A stretch of 64,000 bases of DNA from Asterias rubens (GCF_902459465.1 NC_047064.1:19096001-19160000), one strand, 5' to 3'; shown: positions 31,862-59,964, numbered from the stretch's first letter. Numbers and translations: made by a program. The notes: generated from the sequence alone by a model not told the origin.

Positions 31862-32842
31862 TTATAGCCATGTGGGTCTTTTGTAATACGGTCTATATAA
31901 CTGCGGGTGTGGTTTTCTTAGGAGCATGACGGACACTGTGCAACGGTCAAGCGGTTCGAATCCAGCACGTCGTTTGATGGACCTCATGTCGAACGAACCT
32001 CTTGAAAATGGCATCTTCATCTCGCCATGCCATTCGTATAGTAGTTCGGTAACTCCTCCAGCACAGGCTAGACGCCTGAACTCTCCATGTTGGTCAGCGT
32101 AACGATTGTCAATGTAAAGCACCAGAGCACCCGGGCTTAGTGCTCTGAAAATTTCACGGAGTAAGTCTCCGCGAGTGGGATCGCTCCGGTTGAAAGCAAC
32201 AACTGTGGAGAAAACCTTGACAAAGGTGATGATATCGGCCTCGGAAACTACATGGTGGCTCCACGTTAATAGATGATTTCTCCCTGGCGTTGTTAGGCTT
32301 CCATGTGCATATCTTATACTTGGAAACTCCCCTGGATTGGACTGTTGTATCTCTTGCCAAGTTGTCGCCCATGCGTAGTACTTATCAAATATCGTGCACT
32401 CCAACCGGTTTGTTGGAACCAGTCCGGTGTCCCGTAGAAACTTCGTCAGGCCAGCGACGTCCGACCCGGGACCTCCGCCGATGCAACACACACGGAATGC
32501 CCACTGGTTTCTCTATGTGCGCGTTATGTGTGGCATACCCTCCAGTGCCAACTTCAGACTTTGATAGACCATCCAGCTATGCATCGCAAAGAAGCGGTAC
32601 ACGTAGGTACATCGGTTACCGACGTCGTCCCAGTCTGGTCGACTGCCCGTGCCGCGGAGCCCCTGCCTGTATGTCCGCGAAATCGACTCAAAACATGACC
32701 TGAGATTATGTATCAAATTCACACCACCTCGTCTCGTCATCAGCCAGGAAAAATACTCGCCAACTACTCGATCAAAATAAGCTGCTGCCTCGATTGACCC
32801 AAGTTCGGCCCTCATGAAGGAGAAATCGTACCGAGACGCCAT
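31862..32842 (-). pseudogene. MT1: class I SAM-dependent methyltransferase-like paralog with one in-frame TAG
   Basis: ORFs 32513-32953 and 31862-32491 are in the same frame, separated only by TAG at 32513-32515 where MT2, MT3 and MT5 have Trp. Otherwise 326 codons closely similar to MT3; motif CCIGGGPGSD. Confidence 0.85.
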
Positions 32843-34438
32843 GTTGTGTCTATTATAACAAGTCATGTACCCAAATAAAGAATTGTGTTTTTCTTTGCGA
32901 CAATTTTGTTGAAAACCATTTGCGCAATTGTTTTGGGAGTCCCCCACCCCCACACCCCCAATAATTGTGTCATTGTCTATTTTAAGCCGGGTTCGAAGTG
33001 ACGAGTTAGACTGTCTTTCTTCTTGTATATAGGGACAGGTTTTGGTTTAACGGAACCAGTGATATAATGGACCCTTCCCATGAAATATGCTAATCACATT
33101 CACGCATGCGTACAGACCCTGTTGGTTGGCAAACGCCATAGTCTGGTTACCTGACCAAAGATTCCTGGACGTCTCTTGTTAAAAATCTTAGGTCAGGTAT
33201 CACCCACGGTTAAAAATAGAGCATGACGCAACTTGTCAGGGTCGGGGGTCATCTCCAGGGAAACCATGTCTGCACGTACTACTAGTTGCGATAACGTAAC
33301 CCTCCTCCCAACGGCCGCCAGGCCGGAGGGTTACGAGATTATTTTGATCGTCAATTAATTACAATCTGGTTCAACACGTATAATTTCGACAGCTAGTCAC
33401 CAGATTTTGCCCCATTTTTACCACTTTTAAAAAATCATGAAACTTAATCCTCAATCAATGTCTAACTCTAATGAACACTCACAAGTCAAAACATATTTTT
33501 GAAGAAAAAGGACAAAAACTTACCAGATCCCGGAGCGATTTCCCAGGTTTATATATTTTGAACTTGTCGCATCGCTTTGCAAACGCTTTATTTAGGCACA
33601 ACGCCTGCATTGGCAATAACTGGAAGAATTAAACAAAAAATATATGTTCGTCACACACACTTTCCGACAAAAAGGCGCGTCGGTGCGTGTTTTGCGCCGG
33701 GTGCTGATGACGCGTACCGCATAGACTTACGTGCTACTGATACGCGATTGTTTGGTGTGCATTCAACGCGAGCGTACGCAACACGGGGGGCTACAGTGTG
33801 AACTGGCGTTTCAAAGCGAGTTTAGACTGGATTTTCCGGGAAAAAGTTGTAACCATGACAATTTAACAGTTCAACCTCAACGCCCAACATTTGCAAACAG
33901 TCATATGGATTATTTATGAAGTGTTGTCTTACATATTAAGGCTAAAATCCCGCAACGGATCATCATCTCATGCAAATTTATAAAAATATAATTAAGACGG
34001 TGCGGGCACTGCCTCAAGGTTATACCAAAACGTGTACTAAAAGCACTACTGTCCGTCTATAGGTTCTTTATGTCTGTGGTTTCTACCCGGTTGCATCAAA
34101 ATAAATCAAGGAACTGTTACAATGAAGTGCTGAAAACAATTCTCAGCTCTCGGTCGCGATCACATCGGCATCGGTGGAAATTGATTAGGCTAAAAAACTT
34201 ACTTACAATATTGTTCAAATATTGTGCTACTTCAGCTGATTGTGAGTTCATGCACTGCAGAAAGCAAGATCGATTATATAATTATATCAAGAATCAAGTG
34301 AGCAAAGTCCGCCCTCTGTCGTTCATAGTGATTGATGAGATGTTTGTTGTGACGAGTGAGCTACGACTGCGTGCGGAGGGGGGAGTCCCGTGCCCATAAA
34401 TCATGCAATAATACTCGCCAGGGTACATGACGACCTCA

Positions 34439-57283: not shown

Positions 57284-59964
57284 CTAATAAGGATTATATC
57301 GACAATATGATTTGATTCTGCATCTAAGTTTCAGAGGCGTGGTCCCTTGATCTACGTCTTGGGCATCTGATGAGCCGTCCATCGTGGCCAGTGTGTTTGT
57401 GCTTCCAGGAAAGGGCTCCCCTTGGACTGTCGTATCCATGGAAAGTGTGTTGGTTGAAGGAATAGACTCCACTTCGTCTGCTGTGACCATGGGAAGTGTG
57501 CTGGTTGAAGGGATATACTCCACTTCGTTTGCTGTGGCCATGGAAAGTGTGCTGGTTGAAGGAATATACTCCACTTCGTCTGCTGTGACCATGGGAAGTG
57601 TGCTGGTTGAAGGGATATACTCCACTTCGTCTGCTGGGGCCATGGGAAGTGTGCTGGTTGAAGGAATAGACTCCACTGCGACTGATGTGGCCATGGAAAG
57701 TGTGCGGGTTGAAGGAATAGACTCCACTTCATCTGCTGTGGCCATGGGAAGTGTGCTGGTTGAAGGAATAGACTCCACTTCGTTTGCTGTGGCCATGGAA
57801 AGTGTGCTGGTTGAAGGAATAGACTCCACTTCGTCTGCTGGGGCCATGGGAAGTGTGTTGGTTGAAGGAATAGACTCCACTTCGTTTGCTGTGGCCATGG
57901 AAAGTGTGCTGGTTGAAGGAATAGACTCCACTTCGTCTGCTGGGGCCATGGGAAGTGTGTTGGTTGAAGGAATAGACTCCACTTCGTCTGCTGTGGCCAT
58001 GGGAAGTGTGCTGGTTGAAGGAATAGACTCCACTGGGACTGATGTGGCCATGGGAAGTGTGTTTATCGAAAGAATAGACTCCACTTCGTCTGCTGTGGCC
58101 ATGGAAAGTGTGCTGCTTGAAGGAATAGACTCCACTGTGACTGCTGTGGCCATAGGAAACGTGTTTGTTGAAGGGATATACTCCACTTCGTCTGCTGTGA
58201 CCATGGGAATTGTGCTGGTTGAAGGAATAGACTCCACTGCGACTGATGTGGCCATGGGAAGTGTGTTGGTTGAAGGAATAGACTCCACTTCGTCTGATGT
58301 GGCCATGGGAAGTGTGCTGGTTGAAGGAATAGACTTCACTGGGACTGATGTGGCCATGGGAAATGTGATGGTTGAAGGAATAGACTCCACTTCGTCTGCT
58401 GTGACCATGGGAAGTGTGCGGGTTGAAGGAATAGACTTCACTGGGACTGATGTGGCCGTGGGAAATGTGATGGTTGAAGGAATAGACTCCACTTCGTCTG
58501 CTGTGGTCATGGAAAGTGTGTTGGTTGATGGAATATACTCCACTGGGACTGATGTGGCCATGGGAAGTGTGTCTGTTGAAAGAATAAACTCCACTTCGTC
58601 TGCTGTGGCCATGGAAAGTGTGTTGGTTGAAGGAATAGACTCCACTTCGTCTGCTGTGACAATGGGAAGTGTGTTGGTTGAAGGAATAGACTCCACTTCG
58701 TCTGCTGTGGCCATGGGAAGTGTGCTGATTGAAGGAATAGACTCCACTGGGACTGCTGTGGCCATTGGAAATGTGTTTGTTGAAGGGATATACTCCACTT
58801 CGTCTGCTGTGACCATGGGAAGTGTGCTGGTTGAAGGAATAGACTCCACTGCGACTGCTGTGGCCATGAGGAGTGTGTTTGTTGAAGGAATAGACTCTAC
58901 TTCGTCTGCTGTGGCCATGGAAAGTGTGTTGGTTGAAGGAACAGACTCCGCTTCTGGTAAAGGGAAATCAACTTTAGGGTGAATGTCAGAGTGAGATGCA
59001 GAGATTGATAGGCCATGTTCGGATGGCTTTCTGAGAAGCATTACAGACGCTTTATTGATTTTGAAGGCTTTTCTATTACCAGCCAGTTGGTCATACAAAT
59101 TCAACGTTGCCACATGTTTTGTCACGGGCATACTAAAGTTGCTCGAAGACCGCATATACTCCACTTCTGTAACTCCTCCAGAGCTCGCAATGTTTTGAAA
59201 CTCAGCGTGTTCTATCCCATAACTATTGTCAATGTACAACACCATAGCGCCTGGCTTCAGCACTCTGAAGATTTCACGCAGTAAATTTCCGCGAGTTAAA
59301 TCACTCCTGATGAAAGCAGAGACTGTCGAGAAAAACTTAACAAACGAGACGATATCGGCCGCTCTAATTTTGTCCATTTCGACTTTGTTAAGACTTGTAA
59401 TTGCCGTACGAGTCATGTCACCTGAGAAGTACGTCATCGTTGGAAACTCATCACTGGCATTGCTCTGTGTAATCTTTTCCAAGTGTCCTCCCATTCAGGT
59501 CGGAGATCAAATATCGTGCACTCCAAACGGTTTGTTGGAACCAGTCCAGTGTCCCGTAGAAACTTGGTCAGGCCCAGAGCGTCTGATCCTGGCCCTCCAC
59601 CGATGCAGCACACACGGAAAGACGGCTTGTATTTCCATATATCTGTGAGATGCTCTTTGTCCGCCAATCCTAGCTGCAGACTTTGATAGACCATGTAGCT
59701 GTGCATGGCAAAGAAGCGATACACATAGGTACATCGGTAGCATTCGTCACTCCAATCCGGTCTGGCTGTGTTGTGGAGACTTTTCATGTATACTCTTCGT
59801 ATTTCCTCCATACATGACTTTAATCTGCCGATCACGGAGGCATTCTGGTCTGAACTTGAGGATAAAAACTCAATGACGACTTTTTCAAAATACTCATCGG
59901 CTTCAATAACTGTTGAGTGCCTGCCATTGTTCAGACGAAAAACATCACCATTTACAGACGTCAT
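57284..59964 (-). CDS. MT5: methyltransferase-like gene with 17-aa repeat tail; 1-nt frameshift in this sequence (~893 aa if repaired)
   Basis: ORF 59434-59964 carries the N-half (to ECTIFDLRPEWEDTW); ORF 57284-59494 carries the C-half (KITQSNASDEFP...). The frames join if one A is added to the A4 run at 59475-59478. Ends ...RCRIKSYCRYNPY. Confidence 0.8.
57437..58955 (-). repeat. Coding minisatellite, ~30 x 51 bp, in the MT5 tail
   Basis: Unit ggaaagtgtgttggttgaaggaatagactccacttcgtctgctgtgaccat (51 bp), encoding MATADEVESIPSTNTLP with SVAV/SVPV variants. Confidence 0.95.

What the first reader, a model, noticed from the sequence alone, without database searches (positions are those of the whole stretch)
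31862..59964. Cluster of five intronless, rapidly diversifying SAM-methyltransferase-like genes: candidate undescribed immune-type multigene family
Seen: five paralogs in 28 kb (-,+,+,-,-), each with one uninterrupted coding region, in a genome whose neighbouring gene has multi-kb introns. All have a Rossmann motif-I-like RVCC[IV]GGGPGSD, an acidic end of strand 2 (TIFD), and [AV]SFVKFFS / L.PGA[LM]V[FL]Y[IV]DN strands, preceded by a Y.Y.YRFFA.HSY helix. Two of five are disrupted, and the tails are unrelated to each other. Knowledge: this layout is a class I SAM-dependent MTase fold; duplication with pseudogenisation and hypervariable loops is the birth-and-death pattern of host-defence genes. 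Inference: the motif spacing is closest to Rsm22/METTL17-like and fungal Bmt6/Methyltransf_34 RNA MTases, so the substrate may be nucleic acid. I cannot assign it to a characterised animal gene. Intronless CDS fits retroposition or horizontal acquisition followed by local expansion.
Basis: partly seen in the sequence, partly recalled or inferred. Interest (0 to 1): 0.82.

Follow-up and report, generated by a model that had tools for sequence, protein, structure and literature searches.

The report
Starfish cluster of Bmt6-like methyltransferase genes
A starfish chromosome carries a tandem cluster of fast-evolving, single-exon genes for an unstudied methyltransferase that resembles ribosomal-RNA methylases. 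Every copy has NF-kB-type promoter sites, so the cluster is a testable candidate for an inducible nucleic-acid-modifying defence family, but no function has been shown.

Summary
The window (Asterias rubens chr3) contains five paralogues: three intact (MT2, MT3, MT4) and two broken (MT1 by one TAG, MT5 by a 1-nt deletion). They belong to a cluster of about 9 copies and a family with at least 20 loci in the genome.

An AlphaFold model of MT3 (pLDDT 94) is a class I SAM methyltransferase with an N-terminal helical domain. SAM-binding residues are conserved.

The family is found only as 'uncharacterized protein' in echinoderms, chelicerates and a centipede. Its sister group is a bacterial ~280-aa family that almost always sits in an operon with either an AlkB-like demethylase or DUF1848, never both. 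That points to nucleic-acid base methylation.

New support for the immune idea: kB-type decamers are about 8-fold enriched here, and a proximal site lies upstream of all ten chr3-type copies. Their tails end in a PY-NLS-like R[FY]xPY. dN/dS against A. amurensis is 0.4-0.75, which is fast but not shown to exceed 1.

No enzyme activity or induction was tested. The scan had already found the same family on chr8 (s1-172674).

The parts
31862..32842 (-). MT1, pseudogene in this genome (premature TAG at 32513-32515); 88% nt identical to MT3
   Evidence: The A. amurensis orthologue has an open 345-aa frame.
39155..40249 (+). MT2, intact, 364 aa from ATG (366 from the upstream GTG at 39149). Methyltransferase domain plus a roughly 55-aa Pro-rich tail ending RFVPY.
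   Evidence: Orthologue P0003 in A. amurensis is 90% identical. Transcript-like contigs span 38944-41546.
42440..43408 (+). MT3, intact, 322 aa, domain only with no long tail; the protein that was modelled
   Evidence: Contigs span 42373-43572.
42794..42823 (+). SAM-binding motif I of MT3 (CCVGGGPGSD, residues 119-128); G122, G124 and P125 are invariant across animal and bacterial relatives
42824..42898 (+). 75-nt tract (residues 129-153, through the motif II Asp of TIFD) kept 87-97% identical at nucleotide level among eight chr3 copies that are otherwise 54-72% identical
   Evidence: No RNA structure signal.
48377..49918 (-). MT4, intact, 513 aa. Domain plus an acidic Ser/Asp/Glu-rich tail built on a 15-nt repeat (48521-48879), ending RYTPY.
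57284..59964 (-). MT5, pseudogene (1-nt deletion between 59479 and 59478). The tail has 29.8 copies of a 51-nt (17-aa) repeat at 57436-58954 and ends RYNPY.
32935..32945 (.). kB-type site about 93-103 bp upstream of the MT1 ATG
38840..38849 (.). Proximal kB-type site of MT2 (-315), with further sites at 38510-38519 and 38166-38175. Transcript-like contigs begin about 100 bp downstream.
42325..42335 (.). Proximal kB-type site of MT3 (-115), with a second at 41998-42007. Contigs begin at 42373.
   Evidence: Same positions in A. amurensis.
50195..50204 (.). Proximal kB-type site of MT4 (about -280), with another at 51399-51409
60080..60090 (.). Proximal palindromic kB-type site of MT5 (about -120, GGGGAATCCCC), with another at 60690-60699
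40232..40246 (+). C-terminal RFVPY of MT2 (PY-NLS-like). Equivalents: RYTPY of MT4 at 48380-48394 (-) and RYNPY of MT5 at 57287-57301 (-).
   Evidence: The NLS reading is inferred from the published PY-NLS rule, not tested.

Best explanation
The window holds five tandem members of an unstudied animal gene family. Three are intact and two were recently broken. The family encodes class I SAM-dependent methyltransferases of the Bmt6 / Rsm22-METTL17 type: an N-terminal four-helix domain packed on a seven-stranded Rossmann core.

Shown here:
- the fold
- conserved SAM-binding residues
- the family's range and its expansion in sea stars
- single-exon structure in echinoderms
- fast but constrained evolution
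- strong, position-specific enrichment of kB-type sites in the promoters of this chr3 subfamily
- a conserved C-terminal R[FY]xPY

Inferred: the enzymes bind SAM and N-methylate a base in RNA, or possibly single-stranded DNA. The mark would be m3U-like and reversible by AlkB. The chr3 subfamily is switched on by Rel/NF-kB factors and imported into the nucleus through a PY-NLS. Other subfamilies are tethered to membranes by CaaX, Cys-rich or tail-anchor ends. A role in stress or immune responses is the most likely biology but is unproven.

My odds:
- fold and family: 0.95
- active methyltransferase: 0.75
- nucleic-acid substrate: 0.55
- kB-driven transcription: 0.5
- immune function: 0.35
For: Fold:
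- The AF2 model has pLDDT 93.8 and seven strands.
- Bmt6 is the top Swiss-Prot model, covering residues 23-309.
- METTL17, Rsm22 and a trypanosome homologue score Z 18-20, about 5 units above generic methyltransferases.
- Sub-threshold to threshold PF11312 hits occur across the family.

Catalytic core: GGGPG[ST]D, D153, W158, D182, S211, D244-N245, K309, and Y58/R77/Y80/H88 are shared by 28-32 of 32 animal sequences and at least 94% of 80 bacterial ones.

Substrate:
- The bacterial sister family is followed by DUF1848 in 29 of 80 loci.
- It is paired with an AlkB-like 2OG oxygenase (PF13532, E 5e-36) in 50 of 80 loci.
- No locus has both partners.
- The partner switched about 6 times on the methyltransferase tree.
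- The pairing also holds in 4 of 4 viral-contig hits.
- Bmt6 makes m3U (PMC3950682).

Regulation:
- The window has 24 distinct kB-type sites, against about 4 expected.
- Density is 0.64/kb here against 0.077/kb in 130 kb of random genome.
- All ten chr3-type copies have a proximal site, within otherwise unalignable promoters.
- Transcript-like contigs start 48-100 bp downstream of these sites.
- Rel-homology genes are present in the genome.

Evolution:
- The genome has at least 20 loci in clusters.
- MT1 is broken only in A. rubens.
- Orthologue dN/dS is 0.40-0.76.
Against: - No biochemical or expression-after-challenge data exist.
- The sequencing runs used are only guessed to be RNA, and they are contigs.
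- The window copies score below Pfam's PF11312 cut-off.
- Animal members lack the bacterial Glu after the FxS motif and other residues invariant in bacteria, so the substrate may differ. MT3 and MT1 have lost the motif III Asp.
- No AlkB or DUF1848 partner lies near the animal genes.
- dN/dS never exceeds 1.
- A decamer match is not proof of Rel binding, and the paralogues are not fully independent samples.
- The chr8/chr13 subfamily lacks the sites.
Confidence: 0.5

Rival explanations
1. The genes encode methyltransferases for a protein or small-molecule substrate (for example secondary metabolism), not for nucleic acid.
For: Foldseek against the PDB lists mostly natural-product O- and C-methyltransferases. 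AlkB-family enzymes occasionally act on proteins. Residues on the predicted substrate face differ between animals and bacteria.
Against: Those PDB hits have TM 0.3-0.45 and Z of 14.7 or less, against Z 18-20 for the rRNA-associated METTL17/Rsm22 and TM 0.61 for Bmt6. The stronger matches also cover the N-terminal domain. The bacterial partner is AlkB-like, and that family acts mainly on nucleic acids.
Confidence: 0.2
2. The proteins are non-catalytic RNA-binding or ribosome-assembly-type factors that keep the methyltransferase fold, as is debated for Rsm22/METTL17.
For: The best solved structural matches are mitoribosome small-subunit assembly factors.
Against: The SAM-binding motifs are almost invariant across 32 animal and 80 bacterial sequences. 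There are many copies with PY-NLS, CaaX or tail-anchor ends and no mitochondrial presequence noted. No Pfam Rsm22 hit was found.
Confidence: 0.1
3. This is the housekeeping orthologue of fungal Bmt6, installing a constitutive m3U in large-subunit rRNA.
For: Bmt6 is the best structural match, and there are PF11312 hits.
Against: The genome has at least 20 copies, including pseudogenes. The animal distribution is patchy. dN/dS is 0.4-0.75, and the localisation tails are variable. In flies and humans the 28S m3U is made by the unrelated SPOUT1/Ptch enzyme (PMC11641110, title and abstract).
Confidence: 0.07
4. The family is drifting: neutral birth-and-death of duplicates with no current function. 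The kB-like sites would be inherited by duplication rather than selected.
For: Two of the five copies are broken. Recent pairs have dN/dS near 1: MT1/MT3 0.91 and c3_187k/c3_196k 0.98.
Against: Only the coding regions remain alignable between old paralogues, and their dN/dS is 0.17-0.38. The SAM motifs are intact. Promoter flanks have diverged beyond alignment while the decamers persist. Transcript-like contigs exist.
Confidence: 0.08

Closest known systems
Bmt6 (YLR063W), yeast 25S rRNA m3U2843 methyltransferase; Pfam PF11312 Methyltransf_34
   Same: Class I fold with the same N-terminal helical domain. It is the best Swiss-Prot structural match (TM 0.61). PF11312 is the only Pfam family hit with E <= 1 by four of the five window ORFs tested. 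Relatives in the same genome and in Strigamia pass the cut-off.
   Different: The window copies score 18-24 bits against a cut-off of 26. The family here is multi-copy, fast-evolving and single-exon, with disordered tails and targeting signals. Bmt6 is reported only from 'lower eukaryotes' and as a single cytoplasmic enzyme (PMC3950682). No fungal sequence could be fetched for a joint tree.
Rsm22 / METTL17 mitoribosomal small-subunit assembly factors
   Same: Highest Z among solved structures (18.0-19.9), aligned over 263-281 residues including the helical domain.
   Different: About 10% sequence identity, no Pfam hit, no evidence of mitochondrial targeting, and a different copy number and evolutionary mode.
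Bacterial ~280-aa PF11312-like methyltransferases in two-gene operons with an AlkB-like oxygenase or DUF1848
   Same: Nearest sequence relatives outside animals: 25-33% identity, E down to 1e-22. They share the same conserved residues.
   Different: Animals form a separate clade on a long branch (SH-aLRT 99). They have no linked partner gene, carry tails, and differ at several residues that are invariant in bacteria. I found no paper describing the bacterial module either.
Expanded, kB-regulated immune effector gene families of invertebrates
   Same: Tandem clusters, lineage-specific expansion, pseudogenes, raised dN/dS, and proximal kB-type sites.
   Different: No induction data and no proven positive selection. 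An enzyme of this fold is not a known immune effector class.

Membership tests
Class I (Rossmann-like) SAM-dependent methyltransferases | [quoted passage not shown] | tested here: met
   The AF2 model has pLDDT 93.8 and strands at 116-121, 147-153, 176-180, 203-207, 239-245, 265-275 and 299-308. There are hundreds of class I hits.
Class I (Rossmann-like) SAM-dependent methyltransferases | Gly-rich motif I after strand 1 and an acidic residue at the end of strand 2 | tested here: met
   GGGPG[ST]D and D153 are conserved in 31-32 of 32 animal sequences.
Class I (Rossmann-like) SAM-dependent methyltransferases | SAM binding and methyl transfer | not testable with these tools
   Needs protein and an assay.
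Pfam PF11312 Methyltransf_34 (Bmt6) | HMM score at or above the gathering cut-off (26 bits) | tested here: not met
   The window copies score 17.8-23.6 bits. Relatives pass: chr8:239k 32.4 bits, Strigamia 72.3, bacterial 27.8-32.8.
Pfam PF11312 Methyltransf_34 (Bmt6) | Bmt6-like overall structure, including the N-terminal domain | tested here: met
   Q12291 is the top Swiss-Prot hit: E 1e-8, TM 0.61, residues 23-309.
Pfam PF11312 Methyltransf_34 (Bmt6) | m3U formation in large-subunit rRNA | not testable with these tools
   Activity is known only for yeast Bmt6 (PMC3950682).
Rsm22/METTL17 | Sequence membership (Pfam Rsm22 model) | tested here: not met
   No such hit at E up to 1. The resemblance is structural only, Z 18-20.
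Bacterial methyltransferase + AlkB-like/DUF1848 module | Adjacent partner gene (AlkB-like or DUF1848) | tested here: not met
   The genome has no DUF1848. The five AlkB-family matches lie on other chromosomes.
Immune-type multigene family | Tandem, lineage-specific expansion with pseudogenes | tested here: met
Immune-type multigene family | Positive (diversifying) selection | tested here: inconclusive
   Pairwise dN/dS is 0.17-0.98. The orthologue values of 0.75 and 0.76 are not different from 1, and 0.40 is below 1. No site models were run.
Immune-type multigene family | Immune-responsive regulation | tested here: inconclusive
   kB-type sites are enriched and positioned proximally. No challenge expression data are available.

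The most novel reading that the evidence does not exclude
Echinoderms deploy NF-kB-inducible, compartment-targeted nucleic-acid N-methyltransferases as innate-immune effectors or regulators. The chr3 type is nuclear through a PY-NLS, and other types are membrane-anchored. They would write AlkB-reversible marks such as m3U or m3C on viral or host RNA. The family shares ancestry with a bacterial methylase/eraser module (AlkB-like, or radical-SAM-like DUF1848) that sits on mobile DNA, often in defence islands.
Probability: 0.2. Interest if true: 0.85.

Novelty: new variant of a known kind. Interest (0 to 1): 0.62.

Why it matters
If the reading holds, it would add base methylation by a Bmt6-like enzyme to the inducible responses of an invertebrate deuterostome. 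It would also give a first function to a family annotated only as 'uncharacterized protein' in echinoderms and chelicerates.

The work also exposes a widespread two-gene module in bacteria: a methyltransferase paired with either an AlkB-like demethylase or DUF1848. I found no description of this module. It gives a concrete handle on the substrate, because the mark should be one that AlkB can remove.

All of this can be tested with standard assays.

Tried and rejected
- **Transposon or retro-element origin.** Self-comparison shows similarity limited to coding regions, with no shared terminal repeats. The C-terminal 'R..K.P.R' resemblance to integrase linkers was not pursued further.
- **Sequence search of PDB.** Only marginal hits: NSUN5-type E 1.6; METTL6 E 0.005 with the profile.
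- **PADLOC and NCBIfam.** Nothing for the animal protein, and only weak hits for the bacterial ones.
- **Rfam over the window.** No match.
- **RNA structure in the homogenised 75-nt tract.** z -0.5.
- **DUF1848 or a clustered AlkB in the starfish genome.** Absent, or elsewhere.
- **Aerobe/anaerobe split of the two bacterial partners.** The taxa do not separate cleanly, so the idea was dropped.
- **Fetching fungal Bmt6 sequences for a joint tree.** The last word-index search returned nothing.
- **A second shared promoter motif.** GTTGCAA occurs in 5 of 7 promoters at p 3e-4, which is not significant after correcting for about 8000 words.
- **Foldseek on the DUF1848 model.** Only generic TIM barrels.
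- **Giant-virus origin.** Only four viral-contig hits, all of the bacterial operon type.
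Full report
**What is there.**
The window is chr3:19,096,001-19,160,000 of a 417.6-Mb genome. A RefSeq protein of Asterias rubens is identical to one of the genome's copies, which identifies the species.

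ORF listing confirms five paralogues at the stated coordinates. MT2 (39155-40249, +), MT3 (42440-43408, +) and MT4 (48377-49918, -) are intact.

The other two copies are broken:
- MT1 (31862-32842, -) has one in-frame TAG at 32513-32515, where its paralogues read TGG.
- MT5 (57284-59964, -) lacks one base between 59479 and 59478.

Window self-comparison shows that similarity between copies stops at the coding regions. The exception is the young MT1/MT3 pair, which is 88% identical over 1.2 kb. The unit of duplication is therefore not a mobile element.

Four further copies lie just past the window's end. Other clusters sit on chr8 (about 9 copies) and chr13, with single copies on chr2 and chr10. 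The genome gives 25 matches in all. In every one of them the domain is a single open frame.

**Fold and family.**
Pfam gives only sub-threshold PF11312 (Methyltransf_34) hits: 18-24 bits against a cut-off of 26.

I modelled MT3 with AlphaFold from a 93-sequence alignment. The model has pLDDT 93.8. It shows four N-terminal helices (residues 4-112) packed on a seven-stranded class I core.

Structural matches:
- The top Swiss-Prot model is yeast Bmt6, the 25S rRNA m3U2843 methyltransferase: E 1e-8, TM 0.61 over residues 23-309.
- An exhaustive comparison with solved chains puts a trypanosome mt-SSU assembly factor (Z 19.9), human METTL17 (19.7) and yeast Rsm22 (18.0) on top. Generic methyltransferases reach 14.7 or less.
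- AlphaFold cluster hits are uncharacterised fungal and coral proteins, plus Rsm22 and '25S rRNA' entries.

Conserved residues include motif I (GGGPG[ST]D), the strand-2 Asp, W158, S211, D244-N245 and K309. Y58, R77, Y80 and H88 of the helical domain are also conserved. All of these are kept in 28-32 of 32 animal sequences and in at least 94% of 80 bacterial ones. Animals have their own signature, such as Lys208, and lack several residues that are invariant in bacteria.

**Distribution.**
An exhaustive profile search found 401 clusters at E of 1e-3 or better.

Named members are all 'uncharacterized protein'. They come from:
- sea stars (Asterias, Patiria, Acanthaster)
- a sea cucumber
- crinoids
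- a horseshoe crab, scorpions and spiders
- the centipede Strigamia

On trees, animals form one clade (SH-aLRT 99). Its arthropod and echinoderm parts roughly follow taxonomy. This clade stands apart from a large bacterial family of ~280-aa proteins.

The echinoderm genes I checked are single-exon: asteroid, holothurian and crinoid. Limulus and Centruroides genes have introns. A recent transfer or retroposition is therefore unlikely, and the deeper origin is open.

I found no paper that mentions the family. Bmt6 itself is reported only from 'lower eukaryotes' (PMC3950682).

**Clue to the substrate.**
I examined 80 bacterial loci from many phyla. The methyltransferase has one of two partners:
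- In 29 loci it is followed, within 0-20 nt on the same strand in 27 of them (156 and 246 nt in the other two), by DUF1848.
- In 50 loci it is paired with a ~205-aa AlkB-like 2OG-Fe(II) oxygenase (PF13532, E 5e-36). This gene lies either directly downstream or, in cyanobacteria, divergently upstream.

No locus has both partners, and only one has neither.

The partner changes about six times on the methyltransferase tree. The four viral-contig homologues show the same pairing.

DUF1848 carries a C-terminal CX3CX2C motif. Its model best matches radical-SAM enzymes, at a modest Z of 8-10.

Many DUF1848-type loci sit beside type I restriction genes and serine recombinases, and one sits beside Gabija- and Wadjet-like genes.

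An obligatory, interchangeable partner that in most cases is a nucleic-acid demethylase argues for an AlkB-reversible base methylation, and Bmt6's m3U chemistry fits this. This is inference by association. It applies to the bacterial sister group, not directly to the starfish genes. The starfish genome has no DUF1848, and no AlkB gene lies nearby.

**Regulation and targeting.**
An earlier scan note (s1-150984) claimed kB sites upstream of each copy, so I tested it.

Enrichment of GGGRNWYYCC:
- It matches 41 times in the window (24 distinct sites), against 4.2 ± 2.5 in shuffles.
- 23 of the 24 sites lie in the 28-64 kb part of the window.
- Density there is 0.64/kb, against 0.077/kb in 130 kb of randomly chosen A. 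rubens DNA.

Position of the sites:
- Each of the ten chr3-type copies has a site upstream of its ATG. This covers the five in the window, four beyond it, and the chr2 copy.
- In nine copies the distance is 93-320 bp.
- The tenth is an N-terminally truncated copy, with its site at -544.
- The DNA around the decamers is not alignable between seven promoter groups.
- Downstream flanks have none in 14 kb.
- The chr8/chr13 subfamily shows no enrichment.

Contigs from four runs cover MT2 and MT3 and leave the same intergenic holes. They start 48-100 bp downstream of the proximal sites and show no joints inside the CDS. These runs are only guessed to be RNA. Rel-homology genes exist in the genome.

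The same subfamily ends in R[FY]xPY-stop, preceded by basic residues. This matches the published PY-NLS rule and resembles the FUS/EWS C-termini; that comparison rests on my own knowledge and is untested. Other subfamilies and other species end in CaaX boxes, Cys-rich stretches or tail-anchor helices.

**Tempo.**
dN/dS values:
- Old paralogues: 0.17-0.38.
- Young pairs that include a broken or truncated copy: about 0.9-1.0.
- Orthologues against the syntenic A. amurensis locus, where non-coding DNA is 93-95% identical: MT3 0.75, MT2 0.40, MT1 0.76.

MT1 is intact in A. amurensis, so its loss is recent.

Replacements avoid the SAM site. They cluster in the helical domain and in the loops between strands 3-4 and 6-7. 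Evolution is fast, but I did not show omega above 1.

**Verdict.**
The structural interpretation is right. The 'immune-type' label is strengthened by the kB result but remains a hypothesis.

The thing is a new animal variant of a known enzyme kind. The same family was already reported by this scan from the chr8 array (s1-172674), and that report's reading agrees with mine.

Noticed in passing
window 42824-42898 and the equivalent tract in seven other chr3 copies: A 75-nt coding tract is 87-97% identical among eight paralogues, pseudogenes included. Those paralogues are otherwise 54-72% identical. The tract occurs nowhere else in the genome, and no RNA fold signal was found. It may be a gene-conversion tract or a nucleotide-level constraint.
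   Followed up: partly
window 28419-28983: Four strong kB-type decamers (GGGATTTTCC x2, GGGAATTTCC x2) lie within 565 bp, not next to any methyltransferase copy. This may be the promoter or enhancer of the minus-strand neighbour gene.
   Followed up: no
L030-L109, L134-L137 (bacterial and viral-contig loci): A bacterial two-gene module pairs a PF11312-like methyltransferase with either an AlkB-like oxygenase (50 loci) or DUF1848 (29 loci). The two partners are mutually exclusive. The module is spread across many phyla, with signs of horizontal movement. I found no description of it.
   Followed up: yes
L030:6841-7791 (DUF1848 protein): DUF1848 has an invariant C-terminal CX3CX2C motif plus two more Cys. 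Its model resembles radical-SAM barrels (Z 8-10). It may be an oxygen-independent counterpart of the AlkB partner.
   Followed up: partly
L110:2483-3520 (A. amurensis): The orthologue of the broken MT1 is an open 345-aa frame in A. amurensis. It is only 76% identical in protein, which is far more diverged than the flanking DNA.
   Followed up: partly
window 39155-40249 vs L110:10001-11101: MT2 coding DNA is 90% identical between the two Asterias species, while the flanks are 94-95% identical (dS 0.136). This suggests gene conversion from a paralogue in one lineage.
   Followed up: no
L130:1-1022 (Anneissia japonica): The crinoid family member lies next to a PARP12-like gene (zf-CCCH, WWE, PARP), a type linked to antiviral responses. 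This is a single case.
   Followed up: no
P0048, P0071, P0073, P0074, P0090, P0020; L019, P0016, P0022; L014-L016: Other subfamilies end in CaaX boxes (CVIS, CTII, CVIA, CILL, CTIL), tail-anchor helices or Cys-rich stretches. These follow long disordered linkers and imply membrane tethering.
   Followed up: partly
window 51111-53463; 53817-54664 vs 62787-64000: A 1.17-kb tandem duplication (96.6% identical) and a second duplicated block (94-98% identical) lie between MT4 and MT5 and after MT5. Each carries kB-type decamers.
   Followed up: no
window 16812-17549 (-): A 245-aa open frame with an N-terminal membrane anchor and a Cys-rich motif has no Pfam hit. It is probably one exon of the neighbouring gene.
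   Followed up: partly
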